A stretch of DNA of 64,000 bases, taken from positions 452,806 through 516,805 of IMG/VR virus record IMGVR_UViG_3300034072_000758. One strand, 5' to 3'. A program made the translations under genes and the position numbers. Of the stretch, positions 1-62,851 are shown piece by piece. Below the pieces are notes generated by a model. The model saw only the letters and a program-made list of their open reading frames with translations, made no database searches and was not told the origin of the DNA. Position 1 is the first letter of the stretch. Each line of letters opens with the position of its first letter.

Positions 1-2958
1 GGTGATTTGAATTTCATCCCCCGCCGACAACACGGCGGTCATCACAACCGATGATCCCGTTACCGTATATTCATCCGGGTTCAGGCGCAGACCGTTGACA
101 TCCACGAACAATGTCTCCGGTGCTTGACTATTGTTTCCAATCACATATGTCGAGTTCGCATGGTAATTAAACACTTCGATCTGAACATTCGCCCCAGCGG
201 TCAATTCGCTGAAAGTTCTCAGCGTGATTGTGTCGGCTGGTGTATTTGAAATAACGACCGTTTTGTTCCCGTGATCGACTGAATACAGGCTTGGTGAAAT
301 ACGCTTACCATCAGCAAATGGAACAACGACATCCGCATTTTCAGTATAAGATACGAGGTGAACCGTTCCGTTGCTTAAGATGTCGTGATAGCCTTGTACT
401 GGCATAGAAGCGCCGCCAGACATGAATACGTCAATACTCAAGGTATCGCTCACCGAAGGAGCAACCAACTCTTCTGGGTTATTGCGCTCCATCTGAAAGC
501 CATCTTGTTCGTTGATAGTATCGTCGCCATCCTGATCGAGAATTGTAAAATCCTTTTCATCCGTGAATGATCCACCATCAATGCGATCATCCTTGATGCC
601 AGTCAGCTTTTCGATGTTTGTTTCCTCAAACCCGCCGTAGAAACGAACAACACGATCCGCCGCAGCATTCGCCGCGATATTTTCTTTGACGTAAACCGTA
701 ATGACCGTGTTCGCGTCATAAGAACCATTAAACAGAATTGTATTGCTCGTTATTGTGTAGTTCTTAACGACTTCGTTGTCAGCGAGCACTTCAACGATCT
801 TATTTGTTACGTCATAGTTGAGAGGAATGGATTGATTGTAAATGAAGCTCTCCTGAAAAACGACAGGAAGGTGGTCAATTCTATCAAAATTCAAACCAAT
901 TTTGATAAAGCGCGTTGGGTTCCAAGATGCGGGAGTATATTCCGCAAGATCGCGGCCAGTTTTATTGTAATTAGCGTACCAAGTTTTCCAAGGTTCGGTT
1001 GTCTGAATGATTGTGAGATCACGAGCATTCTTCATATCCAACATGCGATATGAGTTCGTGGACTCGTCAAAATATGCTGGGAAATCGAAATCCATAACCG
1101 ACACCGCAGCGTTGTCGATGTCTGGCGAAACGATACGCGAGAACTCACGAACCTTAACACGATATGGCTTCACTTCGGTGATGTAATCAATGAGGTTTTG
1201 TGTGTTGTCGATAGGCTGAACTGGTACAGCCTTAAGTGGTTCGTTATATCCAATCAAATTTAGGAACGAGGTCTTGAAAGCCCAAGTGACCTGATCTTGG
1301 CTCGAATGAATATAGTGAAGCATATCGTAGAACATTGTGTTTTGTTCTTCGATAGTCAAAATTTCACTTCTCAGCGTATCAATCAAATACTTCAATTCAA
1401 TCGAACCATCACGTTGGTTGAATTGATCAACGTCACCTTCAAACTTGATCAGGTCTTCGTCGTAGAATTTTTCAGAAAGCTCGATTGTACCGGATTGTCT
1501 CGCCACAACGATCCACGCGCCGTCGATGTGTTCACACCATAGCCATTTGCCGTTATCGTCATCCAATACCTTGACGAATTTGTCTTTGTTATTTACGAAA
1601 GAAACGTCGCGGTCTCTAATCGTATTATAAGTAACAGCAGGGGGATTCAAATATGAGTAACCCTCAGCGTACCAATCTACATAATTGAAGAAATCAACAG
1701 TTCTGTAATTCTGATAATTGATCAGTTCGTATGCTGTAGAATTGTATTCCCATACTGTCCAGAAATTGTGAGTTTCGCTGTTTGCGTTCACTAGAACCTT
1801 GTAGCCTTGAGTTGGGTTCGGGATAGCATCGCGTTCTTCCAGCGTATCGACCACAATGTCGTAGGTCTTCACCGGAGAGAATACCAGACCCGGATTATTG
1901 ACCAAGAAGGAGCTTCCATATCCAGTCAAGGTTACGTTAGCAAAATAGGAGGCGGCTTGGCTATACGCACAATATCCGAAGCGAGAAGGACCATAGAACG
2001 GTGAGTTCGATGGAATCTCGTATTCAAGCGCAGTATTATCGTCCAGAGAGCCATTTTTTTGCGACGTTCGAATCGTGACACGATTACTGGCACGGACCAC
2101 TTCGATTTGTATTTCGCCCAGAGCGTTCCATCCACCGCCTTCTGGCAAAATAGTATTATGGCCATTCACGAGAATGGTCTTGGTTGTCCCGGCGTAATAC
2201 ACAAGGCTCCATGCCTCAGATACATTGCTCCCTTTGACCGCACGATTTGCGATCAAGCTATGAGGGACGCCATTGACTTCGGCAAAAGCTACCACAAGAC
2301 CAATAACGTCATCATCCCCGTTGGTGCTACCTACGGTAACGGTATGCTTGTAGTTCGACAAAGCATTCGGTGAAACGAAACCAATCATGTTGGCGCTGTT
2401 CACAGTGGTTTCGAAACGGTTATTGACGAAATCCCAAGAAAGCGCTTCGTTTCCCGGTGGAATCACACCAGCATTAATGAAATATTGATTTCCGTTAAAT
2501 CTCCCCCAAGTATTGAAGATTTCGGATTGTGTAGGCGTCTGAACAACGTCTTCGTCATTGGCATCTTCTGGGATGTTTTCGGTCGATGCTTCCCACACAC
2601 TCCACTGAGGATCATCGACATTGCTAACGCCGTCCACAAGAATTTTATATTTGTTTCCCGCGATTATGGAAGAAACAAAATTTGGATCGAGCAACAGATC
2701 ATTGCGCTCCTGATAACTGTAGACCTTGTGATCATAAGTCGTTTCTGGTGGAAGTTGTTCAATATATTTTTTACCTTCGGCGCGTCTCCACACGAGATAT
2801 TCCGAATAGGGAGTCGTGGCTACCAAGCTATCAATGTACGAAGACCTTTCGATAACGAAAGCTTCTTTCGCAAATATGTTATTAGCTATTTTAACAAAGG
2901 CTTTTCTTGCGACGGTGAAGTCTGTGATAGAAAATATGCCACGATTCAATTCATTCAT
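1..2958 (-). CDS. Large virion structural protein, probable baseplate wedge subunit (partial; runs off window start)
   Basis: ATG at 2958 (MNELNRGIFS...) read in frame to position 1 (...AVLSAGDEIQIT); absent from ORF track because there is no stop in the window; contains WAFKTSFL...IDYITEVKPYRVKVREF, recalled from Rak2-like giant baseplate proteins; TAAATA box 5 nt upstream. Confidence 0.6.
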   Translation of the reverse strand, partial: MNELNRGIFSITDFTVARKAFVKIANNIFAKEAFVIERSSYIDSLVATTPYSEYLVWRRAEGKKYIEQLPPETTYDHKVYSYQERNDLLLDPNFVSSIIAGNKYKILVDGVSNVDDPQWSVWEASTENIPEDANDEDVVQTPTQSEIFNTWGRFNGNQYFINAGVIPPGNEALSWDFVNNRFETTVNSANMIGFVSPNALSNYKHTVTVGSTNGDDDVIGLVVAFAEVNGVPHSLIANRAVKGSNVSEAWSLVYYAGTTKTILVNGHNTILPEGGGWNALGEIQIEVVRASNRVTIRTSQKNGSLDDNTALEYEIPSNSPFYGPSRFGYCAYSQAASYFANVTLTGYGSSFLVNNPGLVFSPVKTYDIVVDTLEERDAIPNPTQGYKVLVNANSETHNFWTVWEYNSTAYELINYQNYRTVDFFNYVDWYAEGYSYLNPPAVTYNTIRDRDVSFVNNKDKFVKVLDDDNGKWLWCEHIDGAWIVVARQSGTIELSEKFYDEDLIKFEGDVDQFNQRDGSIELKYLIDTLRSEILTIEEQNTMFYDMLHYIHSSQDQVTWAFKTSFLNLIGYNEPLKAVPVQPIDNTQNLIDYITEVKPYRVKVREFSRIVSPDIDNAAVSVMDFDFPAYFDESTNSYRMLDMKNARDLTIIQTTEPWKTWYANYNKTGRDLAEYTPASWNPTRFIKIGLNFDRIDHLPVVFQESFIYNQSIPLNYDVTNKIVEVLADNEVVKNYTITSNTILFNGSYDANTVITVYVKENIAANAAADRVVRFYGGFEETNIEKLTGIKDDRIDGGSFTDEKDFTILDQDGDDTINEQDGFQMERNNPEELVAPSVSDTLSIDVFMSGGASMPVQGYHDILSNGTVHLVSYTENADVVVPFADGKRISPSLYSVDHGNKTVVISNTPADTITLRTFSELTAGANVQIEVFNYHANSTYVIGNNSQAPETLFVDVNGLRLNPDEYTVTGSSVVMTAVLSAGDEIQIT

Positions 2959-3045
2959 AGTTATATTTATTTCTCAAAAAGGCTTGACTTTTTGATTTCA
3001 TAGATGGATACTGAGCACAGTCTTAATTTTCCACATTAGGGAAAC

Positions 3046-3252
3046 ATGTCCAGAAAGAAGCCTACCAAGCTCACAATGTCGCAAAAGACGGCGTTGAACA
3101 ACATTCGTCAGAAGTTCGGTGAACCCAAATTTATCTATTATCAGGGTAACTATACCTACTGCGAATTTGCCACGGTCCTATACAAGTGGGACGCGCGGTC
3201 TGAGAAATGGCTTCAAGAGGGCGAGATTTCGGCTCAGGCTGAAACGGCCTAA
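3046..3252 (+). CDS. Hypothetical protein
   Basis: 68-aa ORF with AGGGA RBS, downstream of a TTGACT promoter-like element, 5 nt before nadE. Confidence 0.65.
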   Translation: MSRKKPTKLTMSQKTALNNIRQKFGEPKFIYYQGNYTYCEFATVLYKWDARSEKWLQEGEISAQAETA

Positions 3253-9039: not shown

Positions 9040-10091
9040 AAGTCGGCCTTCGGCTTCAATACCTGTGACAAATTCTGACGCTGTTTGATTTCATATCCAT
9101 CACGGAACGTAGTCATCTTGTCGTTCGACAGGTAGTCTTTCAGGATGCGGTGCGCAGCTTCCCACTCGTATTCGCGGTACGCCACTTCCTTGATCTTCCA
9201 AGCGCTGCTAACGCGCTGGAACAGGGTTGATGGCATGTAGTCGGTACGCAGGAAGAAATCGCCTTCCTGAGCCACGTCTGGGAACGCATGACCAGAACCA
9301 ATCAGTTGAGCACCATTAGGCGGAATGCCATCACCCGCAAAAATCCAAGGGTTCTGTAAACCATCCTCAGAACCGGGGATGTAGTAGAACTGCTGGGTTT
9401 CGAAGTTTCTACGAATGAAATTCGCCTTGGCGTTCTCAACGACTTGTTCGTTGATCTCGAACTCCTTAGTCGCGGTGGATAGAATGTCTCCCAGAGTGTC
9501 GGATGTATCCAACCCAAATGGATCGGTGGCCTGTTTATCCAAAATATCTTGGTATTCCTGAGAGGCCGTCATGGGCTTCACTTGGATACGCCATATGTGA
9601 GGATACCAAGTAGACGAATAACCATCAGCGGCCTTGTCGGCTTCCTTCACGACATAAAACTTGTTGGCTGGCTTCGCGGTCGGTGAGGTGTTATCGCGGC
9701 GGTGTGGAAGCTCTATAACGTCCCCGGCGATGATACGACGACCAAGACGGGCGATCAGATCATTTAGATGGAACTCAATAAACAGCGTATCGGACTCAAA
9801 CATCATCCCGAACTGAGACAAACTGAAATCCGTCTCGTCGTTGATTTGATAGATACCGCGTGTCTCATACACGGTATCCGAATATTTTCTATCGCGGTTT
9901 TCCAAGTATAACGGGTCTTGAATACTGGTAATATTCGTGACGGTTGAGTTAGACGTTTGGTCGTACACACCTTCATATAGGTGAACATATACCGCAGTAC
10001 CAGACACCGTGAAAAATTCCGAGATCACCCTATCGGAGAACTTGAAATCGTTTCCTTTTTTACCACTATTCCAGAGAGTTATACGAGCCAT
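9036..10091 (-). CDS. Virion structural protein, probable neck/head-completion protein (gp14-like)
   Basis: IQDPLYLENRDRKY...SLSQFG...GDVIELPH...WYPHIWR pattern recalled from jumbo-phage neck proteins; TAAATA 5 nt upstream. Confidence 0.6.
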   Translation of the reverse strand: MARITLWNSGKKGNDFKFSDRVISEFFTVSGTAVYVHLYEGVYDQTSNSTVTNITSIQDPLYLENRDRKYSDTVYETRGIYQINDETDFSLSQFGMMFESDTLFIEFHLNDLIARLGRRIIAGDVIELPHRRDNTSPTAKPANKFYVVKEADKAADGYSSTWYPHIWRIQVKPMTASQEYQDILDKQATDPFGLDTSDTLGDILSTATKEFEINEQVVENAKANFIRRNFETQQFYYIPGSEDGLQNPWIFAGDGIPPNGAQLIGSGHAFPDVAQEGDFFLRTDYMPSTLFQRVSSAWKIKEVAYREYEWEAAHRILKDYLSNDKMTTFRDGYEIKQRQNLSQVLKPKADF

Positions 10092-10162
10092 ATTTGTATT
10101 TATATTGAAGAAAACCCCCGAACGTGTTATCTAAATATAGCATTGTTCGGAGACTGGCGCTC

Positions 10163-10540
10163 GTGCCAAAGGTTTATCAAAATTTGTCTGGCACGACAAA
10201 AGACTCTTTTAAGATCGGCAAGAACGGTCCTGAAATCATTCGTGGATACGGAGAGCCAGAGGTCGAAGCTACAAATGGTAGTCTATACGTCGATCAAACC
10301 GATGGTGAACTTTATCAATATAAAAAAGACGAATGGGTTCTCCTGTCCAAGGACTACGCGAGCTTCCATTATCTGTCCCTGTTGGCCCAGCACGAGACGA
10401 TCCAGCACATAGCCACTCTCATGTGTCAGGCAAAAGAAAAGAGCCAATTCCCGTGGAAAGTGACTCTTACTTTATTCGGACTATTTGCCGCGTTTGCGAT
10501 CCCCGGCGTGATCCTTATCTGGTTATTCTTTCCCGACTAA
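10163..10540 (+). CDS. Hypothetical protein with C-terminal TM helix; N-domain paralogous to 29726-30160
   Basis: GTG start after GGAG; VYQNLSGTTKDSFKIGKNGP vs VYHNLSGTTEDKFAIGKRGP. Confidence 0.65.
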   Translation: MPKVYQNLSGTTKDSFKIGKNGPEIIRGYGEPEVEATNGSLYVDQTDGELYQYKKDEWVLLSKDYASFHYLSLLAQHETIQHIATLMCQAKEKSQFPWKVTLTLFGLFAAFAIPGVILIWLFFPD

Positions 10541-16197: not shown

Positions 16198-17154
16198 TTA
16201 AACCCACTGGACGCCAGTATTTCCGTCTAAATCAATTCCGATTTTCTTGAAGAACTCTGTTATTTCGTTACGATCCAAAGTCTTATCCATAAAGTTCGAC
16301 TTGAGTTGAAGATAATCCCAAGACTGAATATGATACGTAAGATCGTAAAGCTTCTCGACCGAGGCTTTCAATTGATCATTATTCATGGATTGAACGAATG
16401 CCATATTGTTTCCTTTGTCATCCTTACCAACACCAATAGCCACCCAACCATTGTTTTCAGCTTTCACCCGCATGTTTACCAAAGTCATATCCGACGATGG
16501 CTGAATGCCGAATGCTTCTGGATTATCTTTTAACGAAGCCGCGAATTGCTTCACTTGCTTAGTCTCGCCCGATTTAGTATTGAACCACGCTTTAAAAGCG
16601 ACAGGCTTTTCTTTTTTCACAAGCTGGTGGAGAATATTTTGAAGCTGGGAAATGAAATGTTGACCGGGATCATTAACGAACGGAGTATCATTCATACGGA
16701 TTGGTTTACTCAGGGTGTGACCATTAGCATAAGCCAAGAACATGATTTTGGCTTTACCTGAGAATATAACTGCTTCGACCGGTGGATAATAAATCTTGGC
16801 AGCTTTGATTATCTCTGGAAGCATTTTGAAATTTGTCATAACGACAATTTTCTTAATGACGCCCTTGCCGTAAATCCAAATAGTCAATTCGTGATTATCG
16901 TGACCAGACAGTTCCCAAATACGCTTCTTGAAGAAATTGATGTCGGTATAATTATTCTTGAGAATTGCGGAATTTTTTGAATCAGTCTTCCATACTTCTC
17001 TACCGCGCAAGAACTTGAAAGCATTAACAACTTCTAACGCATCTTCCTTTGGAAGATTGCGAATGATGTTGGCCAATTCTTTATTCGTTTCTACCTGTTC
17101 AGGGTCAATACCATGTTTGGATAGAACTTCATATGCTTCTGCTTGTGGGTCCAT
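16198..17154 (-). CDS. Hypothetical late protein
   Basis: 318-aa ORF; TAAATA 4 nt upstream of ATG. Confidence 0.75.
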   Translation of the reverse strand: MDPQAEAYEVLSKHGIDPEQVETNKELANIIRNLPKEDALEVVNAFKFLRGREVWKTDSKNSAILKNNYTDINFFKKRIWELSGHDNHELTIWIYGKGVIKKIVVMTNFKMLPEIIKAAKIYYPPVEAVIFSGKAKIMFLAYANGHTLSKPIRMNDTPFVNDPGQHFISQLQNILHQLVKKEKPVAFKAWFNTKSGETKQVKQFAASLKDNPEAFGIQPSSDMTLVNMRVKAENNGWVAIGVGKDDKGNNMAFVQSMNNDQLKASVEKLYDLTYHIQSWDYLQLKSNFMDKTLDRNEITEFFKKIGIDLDGNTGVQWV

Positions 17155-17229
17155 ACTTTATTTATTTTAAAATTGCGAACGCCGCCACGTATATGCTACG
17201 GTTGATTTTATTAGAAAGTAGATGGTGTA

Positions 17230-17805
17230 ATGGAACAAATCGCTAAAACCATTAAGTATGTGACTTTTCTCGCTCTGGTTACATATGTGTCCACATTATC
17301 CAAAGCGGATATTTTGTTTTATTCCCTATTTGTGGCGTTTGTGTTTCTTATCAATGTCCCAGCAATGGCGGTCGGCTTAACCCAGCCGGATGGCGTAACA
17401 GTTAGATATGAAAAAACCTTTTGCATCACTAACCTGTTACTTCTTTCCATAGGTGGGATGATCTTATCTCATTATAAAGGCTTCGATCTTTTCTGGCCAA
17501 TAATGGGTTCGTCCTTCTTAATAATTCTTGCTGCCGTGGCGGCAGGGAGCTTCATCCCAATCACAGATGATTTCTATAAAGACATTCTCAGGGGAGAAAT
17601 TATCGCAATTGGGTTGGGTTCATTGATAACAATCAGCGCTGGCGCAGCAAACGTAATGGGTTATACCAGCAAGTTTTTGGTAGTGGTCGGGTTGGCATTT
17701 TTATGTGTGGCTGCTATTTTATCCAGCGCAACCGTTCGCTTAAGATATAGTATCCCAACAGCATTATGTGCGTTAACTTGGAGTGCGATGTTCGTTCTTC
17801 GGTAA
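17230..17805 (+). CDS. Multi-pass membrane protein (possibly distant Bax-inhibitor-1/YccA-like)
   Basis: About 6-7 hydrophobic segments; family call weak. Confidence 0.6.
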   Translation: MEQIAKTIKYVTFLALVTYVSTLSKADILFYSLFVAFVFLINVPAMAVGLTQPDGVTVRYEKTFCITNLLLLSIGGMILSHYKGFDLFWPIMGSSFLIILAAVAAGSFIPITDDFYKDILRGEIIAIGLGSLITISAGAANVMGYTSKFLVVVGLAFLCVAAILSSATVRLRYSIPTALCALTWSAMFVLR

Positions 17806-17816
17806 TAAATACTTGA

Positions 17817-18572
17817 ATGAGCATCAGACCAAGAGACCGCCTAAAAAGAGAAATCAACATCATGTTGGGTGGAACCCTCGTAGATGTTGAATTGGAAGAC
17901 CTCGAACTGGATTTGGCTATCGACATTACATTGGATCGCTATCGCCAACGCAGCGGTAATTCAATGGAAGATGGTTATATTTTTATGACCATGACCGATC
18001 AACAGGTCTATCAGCTTCCAGCCGAAGTTCAGGTTGTAAAGTCCGTTCTCAGAACCGGCTATGGTCAATTTGGTACAGAAGAACCATTCTCATTGGCCTT
18101 CGTAAACCAAATGTATTACATGAACAGCCCATCCGGTATGGGTGCTCCCGGTGGTACTGCGGGCTTCCTGTCAACATATGATATGTCGGCTCAATATTCT
18201 GAACTGTCTGCGCGTCTGTTTGGTCGTGACGTTGACTTCACTTGGAACGCTCAAACCAAGCGCATTCAAATGGCTCGCAGACCAATGATCGGTGAGCAAG
18301 TCGCACTGGAAGTCATGCTGATTAAACCAGAAGATGTGATCATTGACGATTTCGCCGCTAAGGGTTGGATCAGAAGCTACGCAATGTCTCAGGCTAAAAT
18401 GATCTTGGGTCAAGGTCGCGGCAAGTTTGCTACCTTTGCTGGCCCACAAGGCGGAATTACTCTGAACGGCGCTGAACTTAAGCAAGAAGCGGTGGCCGAG
18501 ATCGAAAAATTAGATGCTGAGCTTACCAACCTAATCGACGCCAATAGAGGCTTCCCATTCATAATTGGATAA
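17817..18572 (+). CDS. Neck protein (T4 gp13-like)
   Basis: LGGTLVDVEL...WIRSYA...KMILGQGRGKF...GGITLNG; TAAATA 5 nt upstream. Confidence 0.85.
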   Translation: MSIRPRDRLKREINIMLGGTLVDVELEDLELDLAIDITLDRYRQRSGNSMEDGYIFMTMTDQQVYQLPAEVQVVKSVLRTGYGQFGTEEPFSLAFVNQMYYMNSPSGMGAPGGTAGFLSTYDMSAQYSELSARLFGRDVDFTWNAQTKRIQMARRPMIGEQVALEVMLIKPEDVIIDDFAAKGWIRSYAMSQAKMILGQGRGKFATFAGPQGGITLNGAELKQEAVAEIEKLDAELTNLIDANRGFPFIIG

Positions 18573-21762: not shown

Positions 21763-23042
21763 TATGAGAAGTTCTTCCCGATCTGGGTTAGAAGATACGT
21801 TAAACCGCCGTCATATGTAAATACAGTGTAAACATCTACCGCACCATTCGACGTGGATTGTGTATACGTAACATTCTGGGGGGTTCTGGCCGATGCTGGC
21901 CATGTTACCGAAAATGCTCCGCCCCCCTGCCGCACCGCAACAATCGCAGTATATGTTCTGGATGTCGAAACCGCATTCGTGAAGGCAAAACTTGTAGCCC
22001 CGGTTAAGGTAATATTATAAAAATAGTTAGCACCTAGATCGAGCGTAACAGTTCCAGACGCACTAGCAACCACCGCAACATTTTCATAAGTTGGCCCCAT
22101 CGGACCTTGAATACCTTGAATGCCCTGAACACCTTGAATACCTTGAACACCTTGAATACCCTGAGCACCAGTATTACCTATAGGGCCTTGTATACCTTGT
22201 ATACCTTGCGGACCTTGTGGTCCTTGCTCACCTCTAACATACCCAGCGTTCCCAATCGATCCATTGGAATATAGAATATTAAGCCAGCCGGTAATCGCGT
22301 TGGCCGAAACAATACCATTACCATATGGACCTGCTGGTCCGGTCGCGCCTTGGTTACCCTGTGGCCCCTGTGGGCCGATCACCGAACCAGCATCAATCGT
22401 CGCTCCCGTTGAGAGAGTCAGAATAAGGCGTCCTGAGCCATTGACCACTGCTGCTGTAACACTGGTCCCACTTGGACCCACCACGGCACCGGCATTGATC
22501 ACGGTTCCAGACGTAAGCGTCAGATAAAGTTGACCGTTCGTAACTGTAGCAGACTGTACACCAACACCATTGGTCCCAGAAGCCCCATCTAAGCCCTTTA
22601 CGTAGCCAGCATTGATCGTGAGGCCGTTGGACATATTAATGAAGAGATCGCCGCTCTGAGCTACGTATGCGCCTTGTACGCCTACACCGTTTTCACCCAC
22701 AACATCACCCACGTCGATGACCGTGTTATCAGTCAAAGTGAAAATCAGATTTTGGTTCAGAATTTGCGCGTTGGAAACGCCGACGCCTTGCGGACCAGCC
22801 TCGCCAGTAGGAACGATCCCGGCATCAATGACTGAGTTATCGGTCATGAGCATCAGAAGATGATTCTCACCGTTTACGTACTCAACGTATACGTTGGCAA
22901 CACCCACCCCACGCGGGCCTTCTGGCCCCATAACAACAGGGATTTTATCGACCACGGCATTAGGTATTATCGTGTCGTTTGTATTGTTGAACATAACTGG
23001 TGGAGTACCACCGGGAAGACGGGCATTGATAATATCTGGCAT
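21762..23042 (-). CDS. Collagen-like tail fibre protein
   Basis: Repeated G-V-x-x-A...L...IDAG-x-V-x-G modules, G-X-Y run, C-terminal WP-containing fibre domain; TAAATA 5 nt upstream. Confidence 0.8.
22098..22229 (-). repeat. Collagen G-X-Y repeat (9-nt period, GIQ/GVQ/GPQ)
   Basis: ccttgaata/ccttgaaca tandem units. Confidence 0.85.
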
Positions 23043-23147
23043 ACAGATATTTATTCAACAACATGACTTGACAAAATATCAGGCTATGCTATCTTATACT
23101 TGTCCCTCCGCTATTGGGTCGTGTGAACATTCTAGGTAAGTAACACG

Positions 23148-24608: not shown

Positions 24609-24685
24609 TGGCAGGGGTGGAGAGATTCGAACTCCCATCGCGCAGTTTTGGAGACTGCCGCTCTAACCGTTGGAGCTACACCCCT
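24609..24685 (-). tRNA. tRNA-Trp(CCA)
   Basis: Canonical cloverleaf, GCAGT-CT-CCA-AA-ACTGC, encoded CCA. Confidence 0.95.
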
Positions 24686-24697
24686 ATAGGCGATCAA

Positions 24698-24976
24698 TCA
24701 CTTGACCGCAAAGGAAGAAATGAGCTTACAACTCGTTTTTACAAACCCTACATAACGAGGGTCCGAGAAACGGTCGAAGTCATTCAAATAATCGAAGTCC
24801 GCCTTGTCGATTTCATACACATGATATTCGACGGCTGGTGAATGCTGTTCTACAACCGTAAAACTACGGTCGCTTCTCAAGCCACGTTCTTTATCTGCGA
24901 TCTTCACAGCTTCAATCGGCCTTAAGTTATTCGTCAAGGCGACGATATGATTTTGATTCAAAACAGCGGTACGCAT
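24698..24976 (-). CDS. Hypothetical protein
   Basis: AAGGAG RBS; TTGACT promoter-like element near 25023. Confidence 0.7.
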   Translation of the reverse strand: MRTAVLNQNHIVALTNNLRPIEAVKIADKERGLRSDRSFTVVEQHSPAVEYHVYEIDKADFDYLNDFDRFSDPRYVGFVKTSCKLISSFAVK

Positions 24977-25036
24977 ACTATTACTCCTTACCCGACATTA
25001 ATAATTTATTTACATTATCAAAGTCAATTTTATTTT

Positions 25037-25127
25037 TGGAGGACGTGGTGGGACTCGAACCCACGGTGGTCTATGTTACGACAACAGGTTAAGAGCCTGT
25101 CCCTCTCGCCGCTGAGGTGACACGTCC
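25037..25127 (-). tRNA. tRNA-Lys(CUU), long-variable-arm variant
   Basis: ACAGG-CT-CTT-AA-CCTGT; extra arm GTC-GTAACATA-GAC; U73, encoded CCA. Confidence 0.85.
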
Positions 25128-25140
25128 GTATCAAAAATGT

Positions 25141-28807: not shown

Positions 28808-28886
28808 AGACTATATTTATCGACCGTGAGTGTTTTAAAAAAACGGTATTATACGTTTCGTAACCAAATGTAAGAGGATTTCGCAA

Positions 28887-30160: not shown

Positions 30161-30194
30161 AGTTTTATTTATATAAAAACCGAGCATTATGTTA

Positions 30195-39297: not shown

Positions 39298-39935
39298 ACC
39301 AATTCCCCATCAGTCAATCCAGAGAGAACAGTCTTCCTCATAAAGAATTTCACATCGCCGTTTTCAGCACCATTGTCGCACATCAAATAATAGTAAGTGC
39401 CATTATAGCCGATAGTAAAATCTACAGCGGACCCAACGCCTTCATGGAATATTTCAGCCGAACCACCCGATGCGCGGATGTACAATTTGCCATTCTGAAT
39501 TGGCGAATTATCAGCTAAAATAAAACAATGATATTCAACCACCGCGCTGAAATTAGTAGCATAAAATCTGCTAGGAACTTCATTACCACTGTAATCAGGG
39601 AAAGTAATTTCAGCATTGGCGACCGGAATTGTTGTTGGGACAAAAAAGTCATTTTCTGTTTGACTTTTCATAAAGTCAGAAAATAACTCTTTCGTTCTTG
39701 GGGAAGCTTCTGTCAGTATCTCGATATTCTGATAGGGGAAGCGTGTTCTGTTGTAATTTACGTCACCAACACCCGGCACATGACCGATGAAAACTCGTCC
39801 GGTGTCTGTGGTCATAACGAGTTGCCCTAAATCTACACTTTGGCTGAAAGCCAGTGGAGACTCGCTTATTGGTTTACCCGGTAAGTCAATTTCCTTACCT
39901 CTAGTTAAACGAAACTTAGCAGCAATACTCGTCAT
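39294..39935 (-). CDS. Putative virion protein
   Basis: RG...DLP...GQL...TDTGRVFIG...NIEILTE; TAAATA upstream. Confidence 0.65.
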   Translation of the reverse strand: MTSIAAKFRLTRGKEIDLPGKPISESPLAFSQSVDLGQLVMTTDTGRVFIGHVPGVGDVNYNRTRFPYQNIEILTEASPRTKELFSDFMKSQTENDFFVPTTIPVANAEITFPDYSGNEVPSRFYATNFSAVVEYHCFILADNSPIQNGKLYIRASGGSAEIFHEGVGSAVDFTIGYNGTYYYLMCDNGAENGDVKFFMRKTVLSGLTDGELV

Positions 39936-39956
39936 TCATAAATCCTCGCATTCTAT

Positions 39957-40628
39957 TTATTTCTTATTTTCGTGGTATTGCTCTAATCTCTGGAACCAAA
40001 TGTCGGAAAAATGATCGAACTCCGCCCCCTTCACTATAAACTCTTCGTAGTTGGTATCACGGTCGATCATCATAATAACGATCTTTCGTATCTCAGTGCC
40101 GTAGAGATAATTATGTGCGTGAGCATATGCAGCACACTGACAAAAATAGTCAGTGATTTGTTCTTTCTTTTTGATCTTCTTCGAGTTCTTGAAGTCCATA
40201 ATGGCTTGCTCACCATGATGTTCTCCCACCAGATCGGTGGTCCCGGCATACAGGGCTGGATAATAAAGCCCCACTTCGCTACCGTAGAGCGTCGTAACGC
40301 CCGGTAGAGCCTCTTTAATCATCTTGTCTGCCATGATAGCCGCAAGCTGAAAGATGGGCTTCCCCGACCGCGATGGGCGCTCTGTGCCAAGGATATGACA
40401 CTCCATATGCTCATGGACCAGAGTTCCCAAATTCGAAGCGTACTTGACTTGTTGGTCAGCAGCCGCATTTCCAATACGCTTACGCCATTCAATCAAGAAT
40501 GTTTTGTCGGCGGTAGCATCCAGAATAGTGGTAACAGAGGGGATCAATAGATTGCTTTCGGGACAGACATAATGTCTCTTCTCGTAAGTAGTTTCGTCCC
40601 GAACCAATTTTTGATAATTAAACGCCAT
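39957..40628 (-). CDS. PD-(D/E)XK exonuclease
   Basis: PSVTTIL, GTLVH, YAGTTD, MDFK, QCAAY. Confidence 0.88.
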   Translation of the reverse strand: MAFNYQKLVRDETTYEKRHYVCPESNLLIPSVTTILDATADKTFLIEWRKRIGNAAADQQVKYASNLGTLVHEHMECHILGTERPSRSGKPIFQLAAIMADKMIKEALPGVTTLYGSEVGLYYPALYAGTTDLVGEHHGEQAIMDFKNSKKIKKKEQITDYFCQCAAYAHAHNYLYGTEIRKIVIMMIDRDTNYEEFIVKGAEFDHFSDIWFQRLEQYHENKK

Positions 40629-44161: not shown

Positions 44162-44214
44162 GAATCAATCCAATTAAGCATCAAGTATATTTAGTATTTT
44201 TAATAAATATTCGT

Positions 44215-44445
44215 ATGCGCTATTTTGAAATTGCCGGTGGAATGAACCTTATGCTGTCATCAGAAGAAGATGACATAATGGGTATGTTCTCGAATAAATC
44301 GAAAGTATACAAGAGTTCAATTAAAGACGAGAGGCTTGAAGAAGTAGCTCGTAACATGGTTACTCGTGGAATATTAAATAGACACAAAGATGACAACGGT
44401 ATATACTTCGAGATTAACGACAATAAAGGAGTTTGGAGGCTATGA
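44215..44445 (+). CDS. Hypothetical late protein
   Basis: MRYFEI start, TAAATA-N5-ATG. Confidence 0.75.
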   Translation: MRYFEIAGGMNLMLSSEEDDIMGMFSNKSKVYKSSIKDERLEEVARNMVTRGILNRHKDDNGIYFEINDNKGVWRL

Positions 44446-45864: not shown

Positions 45865-46146
45865 TTATTTCTTTGTCGGTTTGAGATTTGCCTTGGACAA
45901 AGCCTGAACAGAGGCTTTGTCGAGATACAATCGACCGTAATCAATTCCCAGATACGCCTTACCAGCATCATCCACGTGATAATCCAAGAGAAGATTTTCA
46001 CTCCAAACATAACGACCATGAACGGTTACGGTCAGATCAACATCCGGGGTTTGCTCACCATCCTCGTTGATCCATATACCGCGAACAGCAACATGAATGT
46101 TCTCGGCTTCCATCAGATTCACAATGTTACGATACCAATTTGACAT
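45865..46146 (-). CDS. Hypothetical late protein
   Basis: TAAATA-N5-ATG; RNIVNLMEA leader. Confidence 0.65.
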   Translation of the reverse strand: MSNWYRNIVNLMEAENIHVAVRGIWINEDGEQTPDVDLTVTVHGRYVWSENLLLDYHVDDAGKAYLGIDYGRLYLDKASVQALSKANLKPTKK

Positions 46147-46154
46147 ATTGGTAT

Positions 46155-46574
46155 TTATATCAGTGAAGCTTTAATTACAAATTCAGATAATGCGTACTCA
46201 TCATTCTCAAAATATGAAGACGACATAACTATATCACCAACCGATACTATATGAAACAACCACTCATCCCGATAAAACACCGTAAAATCAAGTCTATCCG
46301 TTAATATACCAATTTCCAGTGGCATTCCATTAGAATACATGGCGTCTCGCAAAGTATCCAAAGCTTTCAACTCCGCTTCTGATGGTTTGAAGCCGGTGCT
46401 TTCATGTTCTATTACTATTTTATAATCATCAAATGTAGCTTCGTCCCATTCCCCATAAGAATCATGTAGCAACGTAAATAAATTCTTTTCAAATCGAAGT
46501 TTTTTAATCATATGTAAAACTTCCATTTCATTCTGAAAATTAGTGTTTTCGGATGCTTCCTTAATAATCAACAT
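46155..46574 (-). CDS. Hypothetical protein (AT-rich)
   Basis: 139-aa ORF following RNase H. Confidence 0.65.
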   Translation of the reverse strand: MLIIKEASENTNFQNEMEVLHMIKKLRFEKNLFTLLHDSYGEWDEATFDDYKIVIEHESTGFKPSEAELKALDTLRDAMYSNGMPLEIGILTDRLDFTVFYRDEWLFHIVSVGDIVMSSSYFENDEYALSEFVIKASLI

Positions 46575-48205: not shown

Positions 48206-48439
48206 TTAGCCTTGGTCCTTCTTACGATTGGCCTTGATCTGGCGCGCAATCGCTTCGTTCTTTTCACGACGACGCTTGACGCTCGGCTGTTCGTAATATT
48301 GGTTCTTCATGACTTCGGTAAGGACGCCATCGCGCTTTACTTTACGTCCGAGAACCTTGATCGCGCTTTCGATGTTATTGTCACGAACGATAACACAAAG
48401 CCCTCTCTTGCTTTCAAATTCGCCCTTATAATGGGACAT
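48206..48439 (-). CDS. rpsU: 30S ribosomal protein bS21
   Basis: VIVRDNNIESAIKVL.RK...G...YYEQPSVKRRR...AIAR. Confidence 0.88.
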   Translation of the reverse strand: MSHYKGEFESKRGLCVIVRDNNIESAIKVLGRKVKRDGVLTEVMKNQYYEQPSVKRRREKNEAIARQIKANRKKDQG

Positions 48440-55859: not shown

Positions 55860-55910
55860 GATTTCGTTTTATAGGTTAGTTGACTCGATGTCAATAGAGA
55901 TAAATATCGT

Positions 55911-56309
55911 ATGCGTTACTTCGAAATATTAACCGAAAGCCAAGTAGACATCCGAGAAGGTTTATATCCTTGGGGCGGTGAAGGTATTCGATATGAAACT
56001 GATCATGGTCATATCGACATCAATACCAAAACACAATTTTCCCCTAGAAAACAGTCGGTGGTAGATTTCGTGGTCGATGAAGATCAACGTGGGAAGGGAA
56101 TCGGGAAAGCCCTTCTACAGCAAGCCATGCGAAATCATGACGATATTGGTGCGCAAGTATCCAGCTTCGCTTCGCTGAAAATATTTTATGACCTTGGATT
56201 TAGAAACCCGGCTAATCCCAAAGGTACATTACAAGAATACGAGCAAACCCGTAAAAAGGATAGCTCGATATTCTTAGCAATGCGTGATCGTGAAGGTAAT
56301 CGCTACTAA
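55911..56309 (+). CDS. GNAT acetyltransferase with MRYFEILTE leader
   Basis: VDEDQRGKGIGKALL (motif A), FYDLGF; TAAATA-N4-ATG. Confidence 0.85.
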   Translation: MRYFEILTESQVDIREGLYPWGGEGIRYETDHGHIDINTKTQFSPRKQSVVDFVVDEDQRGKGIGKALLQQAMRNHDDIGAQVSSFASLKIFYDLGFRNPANPKGTLQEYEQTRKKDSSIFLAMRDREGNRY

Positions 56310-59686: not shown

Positions 59687-60700
59687 ATGGTTGACTATAG
59701 CAATAATGAGCGTGTTAAGCGTTATCTCCCCAGAGTCGAACATAATGTTGGCTTAGATCACTATGATACTAAAGCCGCTCAAAAGGATGATCTCGATTCG
59801 CTTTCTCGTATCTATGATGATACGGTACAGAAGGATTTGACTAACGGCCTTCTGAAAGATATGCGCGATCTGGAAGCCAATGGTAAGGATCGTGATTCTT
59901 CGGAATATCGTGCGATCAGCGATCTCTATTGGGACGTTCCGTCCTATATCCATGAAATTCGTGATCGCCATCTTCCACGATTCGCCAAGTATGCTGATCT
60001 CGACTTCACTAAGAAGCTGATCGATCTACGTAACGCTGTTAAAGCCAAGGAAGTCGTCAAGAAGAAGTCCAAGGATGAATTGGCACAAGATGTCAAGAAA
60101 AACGCTGCGGCTAAAGTCTACCCGGTCGGCACCAAGGAATATGCTTTTAAAATCATTTCGGAAGCTACTGCGCCTCTGAAAGAGGCTGCTGTCGAACGTA
60201 CCCGTGTCGTTGCTAACGAAGTTATCGACCGGATCAAGGCCACGCTGGAAGAAAATGACTTCGATCCTTTCAAGATCGTTCCTAAGATCAAATATAAGAA
60301 CGTATGGGATGCGAACTATGATATGGCTAAGAAAGCCGATGAAGACCGCGCTCGCTATCTTCGTTGCTTGAAGATCGCCAATCAAGGCAAGTGGGACTAT
60401 AGCACTGGTGAATACGAAGGTCGTACCTATGAGTGGAATGAAGCCGCCCGCGAAACCTACGTGGCTGCGTGTGTCAAGGCTACCGAAAATCACTATGACT
60501 CGTATGTTCATAAGATGATCACGAAATGCCCGAACGCTAAAACGGCAACGTTCACCAGTGTGTTCGATGTGTGGTCGTTCTCCACCCTCAAGATCGAAAC
60601 CACCGATGGTGTGGTTGAAAAATGGAATACCAAAATCATGATCAACCAGTCCAAGTTCGGGTTGCTGTTCAATCAGTGGCGCACCACGCTTCAAAAATAA
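59687..60700 (+). CDS. Hypothetical protein
   Basis: 337 aa, GGAG RBS, TTGACA promoter; C-terminal INQSKFGLLFNQW. Confidence 0.85.
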   Translation: MVDYSNNERVKRYLPRVEHNVGLDHYDTKAAQKDDLDSLSRIYDDTVQKDLTNGLLKDMRDLEANGKDRDSSEYRAISDLYWDVPSYIHEIRDRHLPRFAKYADLDFTKKLIDLRNAVKAKEVVKKKSKDELAQDVKKNAAAKVYPVGTKEYAFKIISEATAPLKEAAVERTRVVANEVIDRIKATLEENDFDPFKIVPKIKYKNVWDANYDMAKKADEDRARYLRCLKIANQGKWDYSTGEYEGRTYEWNEAARETYVAACVKATENHYDSYVHKMITKCPNAKTATFTSVFDVWSFSTLKIETTDGVVEKWNTKIMINQSKFGLLFNQWRTTLQK

Positions 60701-60708
60701 ATATACTC

Positions 60709-61587
60709 ATGCGTTATCATGAGATATTGAACGAAAAATCGTTATTGGATGTTGGGGTGCGGGGTAATAAATTTTACCTCGCCGCCCGTTCCCAATGGCT
60801 GAACTTGGATGACTTATTTACCAATCATACCATCGGTAGCATTCGTGGTATAAGTTCTTCCAGAAAAATTTGGAAAGAGTTCGGCCCCAACGCCGGACGA
60901 GACATTTTCTTTGTTATGAACGCCACTTCTGTATTGAAGGCGAATAACGTAAAGCGCGTCCAGTATGATAATGTCAATGAGCTTCTGAAAGACAAATCAA
61001 AACTACTGGCTCGCATATACGACACCAACAATTTTGAAACCAGCGGCGGTTCCAATATTGTTTACGGAATTGTTCGTGACATTTTTCGTTTCCATGATTT
61101 TACCGGTGATGATCCAAATACCCTCGGTAATAATGCGCTCTCCATATTGTCGAGAATGCAACAGAACGGGACCATGAATCTATCCTCCTTGGATGCCTAT
61201 CGAGACCTGCTATTTCAAGCCGCGTCGAAAGGTAGCTGGCATACCCGCGAGTCCAAAAAATTCTTCGCACCACAAAACAAAGCCAAGAGCTTTCCGGTCA
61301 TCCAGAAGGCCATTATCAACCAAGCCAGTCGATATGATATGGAAGCTGAATGGATGGTATCTGGTGATTTCATAGTTCCTACGGACACACACATCATCGT
61401 GGCCTTCGGGAAAGAAGTGATGGACCCTATCAATGATCGAGATAGCAACTGGTCTATAGAGCGAAAGAAAGAAACACAAGCTTTTTTGGAAAGGATGAAA
61501 TCTTCACCCTACAAGTATTCTATCGTTGATGGAAACAAGACGGCTAACATGCTCGTAAAGCTTGGAATTAAGGGTTTACCGGAATAA
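60709..61587 (+). CDS. Putative head-packaged protein (MRYHEILNE leader)
   Basis: Start re-assigned: TAAATA-N5-ATG. Confidence 0.75.
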   Translation: MRYHEILNEKSLLDVGVRGNKFYLAARSQWLNLDDLFTNHTIGSIRGISSSRKIWKEFGPNAGRDIFFVMNATSVLKANNVKRVQYDNVNELLKDKSKLLARIYDTNNFETSGGSNIVYGIVRDIFRFHDFTGDDPNTLGNNALSILSRMQQNGTMNLSSLDAYRDLLFQAASKGSWHTRESKKFFAPQNKAKSFPVIQKAIINQASRYDMEAEWMVSGDFIVPTDTHIIVAFGKEVMDPINDRDSNWSIERKKETQAFLERMKSSPYKYSIVDGNKTANMLVKLGIKGLPE

Positions 61588-61594
61588 ATATAGT

Positions 61595-62851
61595 ATGCGT
61601 TATTTTGAAGTATTAAATGAAGCTCCATTGGCTGACTTCGGTGTTCACGGCGATACATACAACGCCGGGTCTTATAGTGCGTCCGATGTTAAAGTATTCC
61701 ATAATCAAAAATGGCTTCACAAGCTGAACTCACATTTTTCAAGGACACCTTATAACTTCAATGTGTATTTGTATAACGCACCTAATGGTGATTTCTATCC
61801 CTATAAAACTACAACTGGTGAAAGAGACGTTGTAAATTCTATGAAATCGATCCGTAGTCTGTATGACGGTCGTGTCGATGGCCAACAACTTCACAATCTG
61901 GAAACAATGCTAAGTATCAAGCTTCCACCAGCTAACGGTTTCATTGGTTTCATGATGTTTGATAACGAGGGTGATGAAAAGGTCGGCCTCACCCCTTGGA
62001 TTTTGGTTCACCGTCTCGTACACGGTTTGATGGCTAGTGGTGGGCGTGATGCGTCCTCTTCGTTAGATTACGCCCGCATAGAAATGATAAATCAAGCCCT
62101 TAATTTTGCTCGATTTATTAATAGAAACTTTCGATCAACGGAAGTATATAAATTTAAAAGCGCAAAACATGATAAAATTTCAAAAGCGCGCGAGGGTGAG
62201 TTCGCTATTGAACTCATGACGCAATTTATTGTTCAGGGAAAAATCACTCTTAACTTACAAGAACCCGTATATCCGATTCACGGTAAGAAAGTATATCTCA
62301 AAGATTGGGGGCATCTTGACGATGAACTTGCTTGGGATGATTATACCGACAGCAAAATTTATGATCGTCTTTTAAAGATGTATCTGGCCATTTTACCCAA
62401 GATAGATATAGAAAATAGTGACCGTTATTACGTAGAGACAGTGCGCGATAAACTCAAGGCTAAGTTTATAGGTAATCAACCGCCCGCACCAAGAAGAAAT
62501 AATTCATATAATGTTTATACCATTGATGATGGTGAGTTGATCGCATCAACCGGAAATCCAGAGCGTTATAATGACAAAACAAAGTATCGTGTCGAAATGT
62601 ATTATGAAGCTACCCCGGCTAATATAAAAAAGGCTGAGGATAAGATCGCCGCGTGGGAAAAAAAGAAAGATGACATCGATAAAGAGTTTAACGATATTTT
62701 CTACGCTTTCAACGCTTCGTTCAAATCATATCATAAGCATCAGCAGAACTATGCTAAAGCGTTATCGGAATTAGAAGCGTTGAATAGCGCTTTCGATAGA
62801 TATTTGAAAAAATGCGTCGGACATTATTTTGTACTTTCGGGTAGATCATAA
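61595..62851 (+). CDS. Putative head-packaged protein (MRYFEVLNE leader)
   Basis: Start re-assigned: TAAATA-N4-ATG; TPWILVHRLVH...EFAIELMTQ zincin-like motif with E replaced by R. Confidence 0.75.
   Translation: MRYFEVLNEAPLADFGVHGDTYNAGSYSASDVKVFHNQKWLHKLNSHFSRTPYNFNVYLYNAPNGDFYPYKTTTGERDVVNSMKSIRSLYDGRVDGQQLHNLETMLSIKLPPANGFIGFMMFDNEGDEKVGLTPWILVHRLVHGLMASGGRDASSSLDYARIEMINQALNFARFINRNFRSTEVYKFKSAKHDKISKAREGEFAIELMTQFIVQGKITLNLQEPVYPIHGKKVYLKDWGHLDDELAWDDYTDSKIYDRLLKMYLAILPKIDIENSDRYYVETVRDKLKAKFIGNQPPAPRRNNSYNVYTIDDGELIASTGNPERYNDKTKYRVEMYYEATPANIKKAEDKIAAWEKKKDDIDKEFNDIFYAFNASFKSYHKHQQNYAKALSELEALNSAFDRYLKKCVGHYFVLSGRS

What the first reader, a model, noticed from the sequence alone, without database searches (positions are those of the whole stretch)
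2958..61597. Late genes appear leaderless: TAAATA-N4-6-ATG with no Shine-Dalgarno
Twelve genes have TAAATA ending 4-6 nt before the ATG. Starts on the minus strand: 2958, 10091, 17154, 23042, 28807, 30160, 46146; on the plus strand: 17817, 44215, 55911, 60709, 61595. None has an SD in the spacer, whereas early genes mostly pair TTGACA with AGGAG-type sites. T4 late promoters are a lone TATAAATA -10 box with initiation a few nt downstream, which would place +1 at or next to the ATG. Inference: a systematic leaderless late-translation programme, possibly linked to the phage bS21 and Rmf-like proteins.
Basis: partly seen in the sequence, partly recalled or inferred. Interest (0 to 1): 0.62.

Follow-up and report, generated by a model that had tools for sequence, protein, structure and literature searches.

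The report
Late promoters fused to start codons
In this uncultivated 517-kb giant phage, about 60 genes (12 of them in the window) have a T4-type late promoter box ending exactly 5 bases before their ATG and no ribosome-binding site. Their mRNAs should therefore begin at the start codon itself, whereas related phages keep a 20-30-base leader with a Shine-Dalgarno site at the same genes.

Summary
Across the whole 516,805-bp genome, TAAATA sits at -11..-6 of 47 gene-opening ATGs (0.6 expected), plus 12 at spacer 4 and 2 at spacer 6.

These 61 genes:
- lack SD sites (3/61);
- never have a sigma70-like promoter (0/61 against 90/656);
- start almost only with ATG (61:2);
- have a pyrimidine at -1 (43/47);
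- have unusually unstructured 5' coding ends;
- often head divergent transcription units (56% against 25%).

The box, (A/C)TAAATA, occupies the T4 late-promoter position (-13..-6) if the A of the ATG is +1, and the phage encodes a gp55-type late sigma. Orthologues in Atu_ph07, PA5oct, Phosso, RaK2 and a 524-kb sister genome carry the same box 19-33 nt upstream, mostly with an SD in between.

The leaderless reading is therefore well supported by inference, but no TSS data exist.

It is not the whole late programme. About 31 genes, including portal, sheath and tube, keep leadered late promoters with SD, and the major capsid and protease genes are SD-led.

The proposed bS21 link is not supported, because 4 of 5 leadered relatives also encode bS21. 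No Rmf homologue was found.

Phage phiYS40 is a precedent for a leaderless late programme. This is a new variant of a known kind.

The parts
2956..2970 (-). Late-promoter/start junction. ATAAATA (TAAATA 2964-2969), spacer 5, ATG at 2958. Gene is a 1773-aa virion structural protein that runs off the window.
   Evidence: phrog_10938 and others
10089..10103 (-). Junction. ATAAATA-N5-ATG at 10091. Gene is a 351-aa virion structural protein, orthologue of the MS-verified PA5oct gp320.
17152..17165 (-). Junction. ATAAATA-N4-ATG at 17154. Gene is 318 aa, function unknown.
17805..17819 (+). Junction. ATAAATA-N5-ATG at 17817, 11 nt after the stop of the upstream gene. Gene is a 251-aa head-tail adaptor-like protein.
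   Evidence: (phrog_211)
23040..23054 (-). Junction. ATAAATA-N5-ATG at 23042. Gene is a 426-aa collagen-repeat tail fibre protein.
28805..28820 (-). Junction. ATAAATA-N6-ATG at 28807. Gene is 251 aa, function unknown.
30158..30172 (-). Junction. ATAAATA-N5-ATG at 30160. Gene is 144 aa with a weak virion-protein match.
44203..44217 (+). Junction. ATAAATA-N5-ATG at 44215. Gene is 76 aa and starts MRYFEI (a peptide resembling the T4 capsid-targeting sequence).
46144..46158 (-). Junction. ATAAATA-N5-ATG at 46146. Gene is 93 aa and starts MSNWYRN.
55900..55913 (+). Junction. ATAAATA-N4-ATG at 55911. Gene is a 132-aa GNAT acetyltransferase that starts MRYFEI.
60697..60711 (+). Junction. ATAAATA-N5-ATG at 60709. 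The TAA of the box is the stop codon of the upstream gene (59687-60700). Gene is 292 aa and starts MRYHEI.
61584..61597 (+). Junction. ATAAATA-N4-ATG at 61595. The TAA of the box is the stop codon of the upstream gene. Gene is 418 aa and starts MRYFEV.
10131..10165 (+). Leadered late-type promoter in the same window. CTAAATA lies 25 nt before the GTG at 10163, with GGAG in the leader. It is divergent from the 10091 junction.
24974..25013 (-). Leadered late-type promoter. GTAAATA lies 30 nt before the ATG at 24976, with AAGGAG in the leader.
39933..39960 (-). Leadered late-type promoter. ATAAATA lies 18 nt before the ATG at 39935, with GAGG in the leader.
48206..48439 (-). Phage bS21 gene. It is SD-led and not of the fused class. 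It is not part of the mechanism as far as the evidence goes.

Best explanation
The (A/C)TAAATA box is the -10-type element of a T4-like late promoter. It has no -35 element and is read by host RNA polymerase core carrying the phage's gp55-type late sigma. In about 60 genes of this phage the box ends 5 nt (sometimes 4 or 6) before the ATG, so transcription should start on or within a base of the A of the start codon. That would give leaderless mRNAs with a 5'-terminal AUG, which are translated without a Shine-Dalgarno interaction, in the established model by direct 70S binding.

A second class of about 31 late promoters keeps a leader of roughly 12-35 nt with an SD. This class serves high-copy virion genes such as portal, sheath and tube. 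The major capsid and protease genes are also SD-led. The leaderless class covers terminase, baseplate wedge proteins, tail fibres, adaptor, giant structural proteins and many small proteins with N-terminal peptides resembling the T4 capsid-targeting sequence.

What is shown: the geometry, the statistics, the presence of the sigma homologue, the comparative shift and the functional bias.

What is inferred: the TSS position, the leaderless translation and the reason. My best guess for the reason is that it sets a lower translation level for low-copy late proteins.
For: 1. Sharp spacing. 47 sites at N5, 12 at N4 and 2 at N6, against 0-8 at any other spacer. The excess at -11..-6 is 78-fold.
2. 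T4 geometry. The first base of T4's TATAAATA is -13, so the box spans -13..-6 (PMC2988020). With the A of the ATG as +1, the box here spans -12..-6 exactly.
3. Late sigma. A gp55-type sigma is encoded at G000 307850-308638, minus strand (phrog_12791 E 6e-76, phrog_234 E 7e-18).
4. Pyrimidine at -1 in 43/47 against 159/261 SD genes, p 2e-5. A -1Y/+1R preference at bacterial TSSs is my own knowledge.
5. Start codon. ATG:non-ATG is 61:2 against 204:57, p 2e-4. Leaderless translation strongly prefers AUG (PMC9031893).
6. No SD in 58/61, and no sigma70-like promoter in 0/61 against 90/656, p 4e-4.
7. Weak structure. The first 36 nt of these CDSs fold with a mean of -1.99 kcal/mol, against -3.78 in SD genes (p 3e-6) and -4.81 at an internal position.
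8. Position in transcription units. 56% have a divergent upstream neighbour against 25% of other genes, p 2e-6. Five back-to-back pairs exist, four of them with only 21-28 nt between the two ATGs, which leaves no room for leaders.
9. Same promoter family. The extended consensus (A/C at -12) occurs in 95% of fused boxes and 81% of leadered boxes, against 37% of other TAAATA.
10. Orthologues keep a leader. The orthologue of window 9036-10091 has the box 19-28 nt upstream with an SD in PA5oct, Atu_ph07, Phosso and RaK2. In sister genome G002, 8-9 of about 14 evaluable orthologues have it 19-33 nt upstream. In Atu_ph07, 7 of 9 have it 23-33 nt upstream.
11. Genome-wide N5 counts: G000 47, G002 4, Atu_ph07 (400 kb held) 1, G003 7, G004 5, G005 1.
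12. Late function. 16 of 22 functionally categorised fused-class proteins are virion, tail or packaging proteins.
13. Little redundancy. 51 of 61 proteins are singletons at E 1e-4, so duplication does not inflate the count.
Against: - There are no transcription start data.
- In the leadered class of the same genome, the base 6 nt after the box shows no purine preference (12/31). The box-to-+1 distance is therefore taken from T4, not confirmed here.
- No gp45-type clamp was found, and gp33 was not searched.
- Eleven fused genes lie 15 nt or less behind a same-strand gene. In 10 of 61 the box's TAA closes an upstream frame. Those genes could also be reached on read-through transcripts.
- Terminator-like hairpins just upstream are not enriched (3/61).
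- The host is unknown. In SD-using Proteobacteria, leaderless mRNAs are generally translated poorly (own knowledge).
- The explanation based on expression level is untested.
Confidence: 0.7

Rival explanations
1. The box is an RNA-level signal rather than a promoter. It could be a non-SD ribosome-recruitment or enhancer element, or an endonuclease processing site, placed 5 nt before the AUG on longer transcripts. It might be read by phage-modified ribosomes (bS21, IF1).
For: The spacing to the ATG is as tight as for a translation signal. Eleven genes abut an upstream same-strand gene, and in 10 the TAA of the box is that frame's stop, which resembles termination-reinitiation contexts. The phage encodes bS21 and IF1.
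Against: The identical extended box occurs 17-40 nt upstream of about 31 other genes with an ordinary SD between box and ATG, and at the orthologues in relatives. That fits a promoter and not a start-proximal RNA signal. The genes are enriched at divergent junctions, and the back-to-back pairs have 21-28 nt between ATGs. bS21 is present in 4 of 5 relatives that lack the arrangement, and IF1 is present in the leadered sister genome. By my own inspection, the conserved 3' tail of 16S rRNA has no complement to UAAAUA.
Confidence: 0.08
2. The box is a late promoter, but these genes are mainly expressed from longer read-through or upstream-initiated transcripts, or from starts a few bases upstream that give 1-5-nt leaders. 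On this view, true 5'-AUG leaderless translation is a minor contribution, and the close spacing reflects genome compaction.
For: The position of the TSS relative to the box is not verified in this genome. In 59 IMG/VR relatives the same gene has GGTAAATA-N7/8-ATG, which predicts leaders of 2-3 nt. 27 of 61 fused genes have a same-strand upstream neighbour.
Against: Compaction alone does not explain four features: the fixed 5-nt spacer, the pyrimidine at -1, the exclusive ATG and the extra-weak 5' structure. In addition, 34 genes head divergent units and so need their own promoter. An internal AUG without an SD on a read-through mRNA would be poorly translated.
Confidence: 0.17
3. The pattern is an artefact of a few duplicated promoter-plus-N-terminus cassettes (the MRYFE and MSNWYR families), or of wrongly chosen start codons.
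For: About 19 fused genes share one of two short N-terminal peptides. In 19 of 61 ORFs an in-frame start candidate lies upstream of the fused ATG.
Against: 51 of 61 proteins are singletons at E 1e-4, and more than 40 have unrelated N-termini. In 42 of 61 the fused ATG is the first start of the ORF. Alignments to orthologues begin at residue 1 with offset 0 for several genes, including the MS-verified PA5oct virion protein.
Confidence: 0.03

Closest known systems
T4-type late promoters (TATAAATA at -13..-6, read by gp55), including the ATAAATA motif reported before structural genes of the Rak2-like jumbo phages CBB and GAP32 (PMC2988020; PMC5259590)
   Same: An almost invariant TAAATA core with A at -12. 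No -35 element. An AT-rich stretch after the box. A gp55-type sigma is encoded. The motif is associated with virion genes. Relatives of this phage (Atu_ph07, PA5oct, Phosso, RaK2) carry it at orthologous genes.
   Different: In T4 and the cultured relatives the box lies about 19-33 nt before the ATG, usually with an SD in the leader. Here, two thirds of the boxes near gene starts end 5 nt before the ATG and have no SD. T at -13 is not conserved. No gp45-type clamp was detected. The CBB paper does not mention leaderless transcripts.
Leaderless genes recognised by a -10 element adjacent to the ORF (Deinococcus-Thermus, Actinobacteria; PMC12340547, PMC3160421, PMC4007540)
   Same: A promoter -10 element immediately upstream of the start codon, no SD, and a sequence signature that can be detected genome-wide.
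   Different: Those are host sigma70/sigmaA -10 boxes (TANNNT type) in bacterial chromosomes. Here the box is a phage late-sigma box, confined to one temporal class, in a genome whose other genes use SD.
Thermus phage phiYS40 middle/late leaderless transcripts (as summarised in PMC3594737)
   Same: A phage in which most transcripts of a late temporal class lack a leader, which implies a class-wide switch in the mode of initiation.
   Different: phiYS40 infects a host that itself uses many leaderless mRNAs, and it is unrelated to the T4-like or Rak2-like phages. Its reported mechanism (IF2 raised, IF3 lowered) cannot be tested here. This phage keeps SD leaders for its most abundant virion proteins.

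Membership tests
T4-type (gp55-dependent) late promoter | Conserved TATAAATA-like box about one helical turn upstream of +1, with no -35 element | tested here: met
   (A/C)TAAATA is invariant at -11..-6, with A or C at -12 in 58/61. No information content is seen from -45 to -14. T at -13 is not conserved.
T4-type (gp55-dependent) late promoter | Phage-encoded gp55-family sigma factor | tested here: met
   L008:1345-2133 (minus strand) matches phrog_12791 'sigma factor for late transcription' at E 6e-76 and phrog_234 at E 7e-18. It gives a weak direct hit to T4 gp55.
T4-type (gp55-dependent) late promoter | AT-rich segment immediately downstream of the box | tested here: met
   A+T is 74%, 76%, 62%, 52% and 68% at positions -5 to -1, against 55% in the genome. 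G is nearly absent at -5..-3.
T4-type (gp55-dependent) late promoter | gp45 sliding-clamp activator and gp33 co-activator | tested here: inconclusive
   No match to T4 gp45 at E up to 1, nor to Pfam DNA_PPF. gp33 was not searched. The CBB paper also found neither in that relative. Sequence searches may miss divergent clamps.
T4-type (gp55-dependent) late promoter | Drives late (virion, packaging) genes | tested here: met
   16 of 22 functionally categorised fused-class proteins are virion, tail or packaging proteins. The leadered boxes precede portal, sheath and tube. The timing itself was not measured.
Leaderless mRNA genes | Transcription start at (or within a few nt of) the start codon | not testable with these tools
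The TSS position is inferred from T4 geometry and the pyrimidine at -1.
Leaderless mRNA genes | No Shine-Dalgarno site, with the -10 element abutting the ORF | tested here: met
   3 of 61 have SD-like words, against 48% of other genes. The spacer is 5 +/- 1.
Leaderless mRNA genes | Strong preference for AUG, and an accessible 5' end | tested here: met
   ATG 61 against GTG+TTG 2, compared with 22% non-ATG in SD genes. MFE of the first 36 nt is -1.99 against -3.78 kcal/mol.
   bS21 is present in 4 of 5 cultured relatives without the arrangement and absent from sister G002. RMF Pfam gives no match in the genome.

The most novel reading that the evidence does not exclude
A lineage of giant T4-related phages has converted most of its gp55-type late promoters, en masse, into promoter/start-codon fusions. 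This splits the late proteome into SD-led abundant virion proteins and about 60 leaderless low-copy or packaged proteins. The phage would therefore run two initiation modes in parallel late in infection, 30S/SD-led and 70S/5'-AUG. Leaderless initiation would act as a built-in stoichiometry or timing control, or as an escape from an SD-directed shut-off. The sister genome (G002) and the intermediate relatives (G003, G004) would form a natural series showing how leaders are lost.
Probability: 0.3. Interest if true: 0.7.

Novelty: new variant of a known kind. Interest (0 to 1): 0.55.

Why it matters
If confirmed, this would be the first case of a T4-type late promoter class that produces leaderless mRNAs wholesale. 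It would sit in a phage whose other genes, and whose close relatives, use ordinary SD leaders.

It gives three things:
- A clean natural comparison of leadered and leaderless orthologues under the same promoter. This bears on how bacteria translate 5'-AUG mRNAs and why leaders are kept or lost.
- A practical annotation rule for this phage group: (A/C)TAAATA-N5-ATG marks true starts of late genes.
- A compact late promoter-plus-start module that could be tested with the phage sigma in a laboratory host.

It also warns that SD-based start prediction will misplace starts in such genomes.

Tried and rejected
- Megablast of 12 kb of the window against phage records: no match.
- Terminator-like hairpins upstream of the junctions are not enriched: 3/61 against 18/656. 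I dropped this as an argument, although single cases are striking, such as G000 46394 and 14780.
- I looked for a -1Y/+1R pattern 6 nt after the box in the leadered class and found none.
- Links to translation factors were rejected. RMF (PF04957) and IF3_C (PF00707) give no match. IF1 is present but is also in the leadered sister genome. bS21 is widespread in leadered relatives.
- gp45 clamp searches were negative.
- One-mismatch variants of TAAATA at -11..-6 are not notably enriched, so I did not widen the class.
- A related-loci search with the adaptor protein gave only 5 distant loci, and I did not use them.
- Host identity was not resolved. The relatives infect Alpha- and Gammaproteobacteria.
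- Literature searches for leaderless with TATAAATA, gp55 or huge phages found no prior description.
- The PA5oct paper reports only sigma70-like promoters.

Full report
**What the window is**

The window is the last 64 kb (G000:C1:452806-516805) of a 516,805-bp IMG/VR virus genome. The genome has a 127-bp terminal overlap, is rated 100% complete and has 45% G+C.

A structural protein (window 9036-10091, minus strand) places it among the giant T4-related myoviruses. The matches are Sinorhizobium phage Phosso and Agrobacterium phage Atu_ph07 (44% identity), Salicola SCTP-2, Pseudomonas PA5oct and the Rak2-like phages. The genome also encodes 57 tRNAs.

**The observation**

In each case the base before the box is A, giving ATAAATA.

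The number of TAAATA in the window (47) is what shuffles give (42 +/- 7). The signal is positional. Over the whole genome there are 318 TAAATA. An ATG that opens an ORF of at least 80 codons follows at spacer 5 in 47 cases, at spacer 4 in 12 and at spacer 6 in 2. Every other spacer from 0 to 60 has 0-8.

Among all candidate ATGs of 717 called genes, TAAATA at -11..-6 is the most enriched hexamer: 47 observed against 0.6 expected, which is above any SD hexamer.

I call the 61 genes with this junction the fused class. Their products are mostly unrelated to each other (51 singletons at E 1e-4), so duplication does not inflate the count.

**Properties of the fused class**

- SD-like words occur before 3 of 61, against 317 of 656 other genes and 18% of random positions.
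- No fused gene has a sigma70-like TTGACN-N16-18-TANNNT site 35-150 nt upstream, whereas 90 other genes do, 83 of them SD-class (p 4e-4).
- There is no conserved -35 region. The information lies in A/C at -12, TAAATA at -11..-6, an A+T-rich spacer poor in G, and a pyrimidine at -1 (46 of 50). The pyrimidine count is 43/47 against 159/261 in strong-SD genes, p 2e-5.
- Start codons are ATG in 61, against one GTG and one TTG at the same spacings. Strong-SD genes use 22% GTG/TTG (p 2e-4).
- The first 36 nt of fused-class coding sequences are unusually unstructured. Mean MFE is -1.99 kcal/mol, against -3.78 in SD genes (p 3e-6) and -4.81 at +120 in the same genes.
- 34 of 61 have a divergently oriented upstream neighbour, against 166 of 655 other genes (p 2e-6).
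- Five pairs are back to back. Four of them have only 21-28 nt between the two ATGs and overlapping boxes (G000 225596/225618, 262878/262901, 10707/10734, 99985/100014). The fifth (90905/90987) has 81 nt.

**What the box is**

T4 late promoters are an 8-bp TATAAATA about one helical turn upstream of +1, with no -35 element and an AT-rich stretch after the box. The first T is position -13 (PMC2988020), so the box spans -13..-6.

If the A of the ATG is numbered +1, the box here spans exactly -12..-6. T4 geometry therefore predicts initiation on the A of the start codon for the 5-nt spacer.

The phage encodes a gp55-type late sigma, at L008:1345-2133 (minus strand), which is G000 307850-308638. 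It matches phrog_12791 at E 6e-76 and phrog_234 at E 7e-18.

An ATAAATA motif before structural genes, together with a gp55-like sigma, was already reported for the Rak2-like phages CBB and GAP32 (PMC5259590). That paper says nothing about leaders.

Of the 52 fused-class proteins scanned, 22 received a functional category. Sixteen are virion, tail or packaging proteins: large terminase, two baseplate wedge proteins, several tail fibres, a head-tail adaptor and giant structural proteins. Six are enzymes: GNAT, RNA ligase-like, methyltransferase, ParB-C, esterase and a RusA-like resolvase.

**A second, leadered class in the same genome**

About 31 SD-class genes have the same box 17-40 nt upstream, with a local peak at 30-32 nt. 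They include portal (30 nt), tail sheath (31 nt, AGGAG) and tail tube (32 nt, GAGG). The major capsid, prohead protease, scaffold-like and head-closure genes are SD-led inside operons.

Both classes share the A/C preference at -12 (95% and 81%), against 37% for the remaining TAAATA. They therefore belong to one promoter family.

So the leaderless arrangement covers roughly two thirds of the boxes near gene starts, not the whole late programme. The most abundant virion proteins are on the SD side.

**Comparison with relatives**

*Orthologue of window 9036-10091.* It carries the box 19-28 nt before its ATG with an SD in between in PA5oct (ATAAATA...AGGAG), Atu_ph07 (GTAAATA...GAGG), Phosso (ATAAATA...GGGAG) and RaK2 (CTAAATA...GGAG).

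*Cultured relatives genome-wide.* ATAAATA-N5-ATG occurs at control level in the five cultured genomes.

*Sister genome.* The 524-kb genome G002 (IMGVR_UViG_3300037418_001546, 52% identity in that protein) shows a broad hump of box-to-ATG distances at 18-35 nt and only 4 cases at N5. Of about 14 evaluable orthologues of fused-class genes in G002, 8-9 have ATAAATA 19-33 nt upstream. In Atu_ph07, 7 of 9 have it 23-33 nt upstream.

*Uncultivated relatives.* The arrangement is not unique to G000.
- The closest fragment (G001, 55% identity) has ATAAATA-N5-ATG at the orthologue.
- Two 38.5%-GC fragments (G003, G004) have 7 and 5 N5 sites, which is 3-4 per 100 kb against 9 per 100 kb here.
- 59 IMG/VR loci carry a conserved GGTAAATA-N7/8-ATG at this gene, which predicts 2-3-nt leaders.

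G000 is thus the extreme of a graded trait. The simplest reading is repeated loss of the leader downstream of a positionally conserved promoter.

**How it most likely works**

Shown:
- the geometry and the statistics;
- the sigma homologue;
- the two promoter classes;
- the comparative shift;
- the functional bias.

Inferred:
- RNAP carrying the phage sigma initiates on the A of the ATG, or within a base of it at the N4 and N6 sites;
- the resulting 5'-AUG mRNAs are translated by the leaderless route, which prefers AUG and an accessible 5' end (PMC9031893).

The split between SD-led abundant proteins and leaderless low-copy or packaged proteins suggests that leaderless initiation sets a lower translation level. 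This is my inference only.

**Weaknesses**

- No TSS data are available.
- The leadered class shows no purine preference 6 nt after the box.
- No clamp or gp33 homologue was found or sought.
- Eleven fused genes lie 15 nt or less behind a same-strand gene, and in 10 the box's TAA closes an upstream frame. Read-through transcripts may contribute there.
- The host is unknown.

bS21 is present at window 48206-48439, minus strand (Pfam E 5e-18). It is itself SD-led. Atu_ph07, PA5oct, Phosso and SCTP-2 also encode it, and all of them lack the fused arrangement. The sister genome G002 does not encode it.

There is no RMF or IF3_C match in the genome. An IF1 homologue exists but is shared with G002. 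Nothing ties these factors to the leaderless class.

**Novelty**

Leaderless genes marked by a -10 box next to the ORF are known in Deinococcus-Thermus and Actinobacteria (PMC12340547, PMC3160421, PMC4007540). Thermus phage phiYS40 is reported to make most of its middle and late transcripts without leaders (PMC3594737). T4-type boxes in Rak2-like phages are also known.

I found no report of gp55-type late promoters fused to start codons. I rate this a new variant of a known kind. It is well supported as a sequence pattern and unverified as a transcript structure.

Noticed in passing
window starts 44215(+), 55911(+), 60709(+), 61595(+) and 46146(-); genome-wide list: About 23 otherwise unrelated proteins begin with one of two short peptides, MRY(F/H)E(I/L)(L/I)xE or MS(N/H)WYRN(L/I)xNLxE, and 19 of them have the fused promoter. 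The peptides resemble the N-terminus MKTYQEFIAE of T4 internal proteins IPII and IPIII (read from the T4 record). That peptide is the T4 capsid-targeting sequence, cut after (L/I)xE (own knowledge). These are candidate packaged or ejected proteins, and one of them is a GNAT acetyltransferase.
   Followed up: partly
L012-L074 (IMG/VR relatives), upstream of the orthologue of window 9036-10091: 59 loci from many metagenomes carry a strongly conserved GGTAAATA-N7/8-ATG with no SD. By T4 geometry this predicts leaders of only 2-3 nt. Near-leaderless late genes may therefore be common in an uncultivated clade with about 38% GC.
   Followed up: partly
G000 225596/225618, 262878/262901, 10707/10734, 99985/100014 (outside the window): Divergent gene pairs lie only 21-28 nt apart. 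The whole intergenic region consists of two overlapping late boxes that form a near-palindrome, TATTTATAAATA.
   Followed up: partly
window about 24609-26200 (-); G000 117291-117364: There is a cluster of 14 tRNA genes in the window, and 57 tRNAs in the genome. They include three tRNA-Met(CAT) and one tRNA with anticodon CTA, which would read TAG.
   Followed up: no
G000 30364-30549 (-), outside the window: A phage-encoded IF1 homologue (PF01176, E 1.6e-20). The 524-kb sister genome G002 also has one (49% identity).
   Followed up: partly
window 48817 (-), TAAATA at 48822-48827: This is the thirteenth TAAATA-N4-ATG in the window. It lies 292 codons inside a 415-aa ORF and is probably a chance occurrence or an internal start.
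   Followed up: no
nine fused junctions genome-wide (count); the window 23042 junction shows the word: TGTCAA lies 2-25 nt upstream of the late box. It is the reverse complement of TTGACA, that is, the -35 of a divergent sigma70-type promoter on the other strand. Early and late promoters therefore interleave in the same short intergenic regions.
   Followed up: partly
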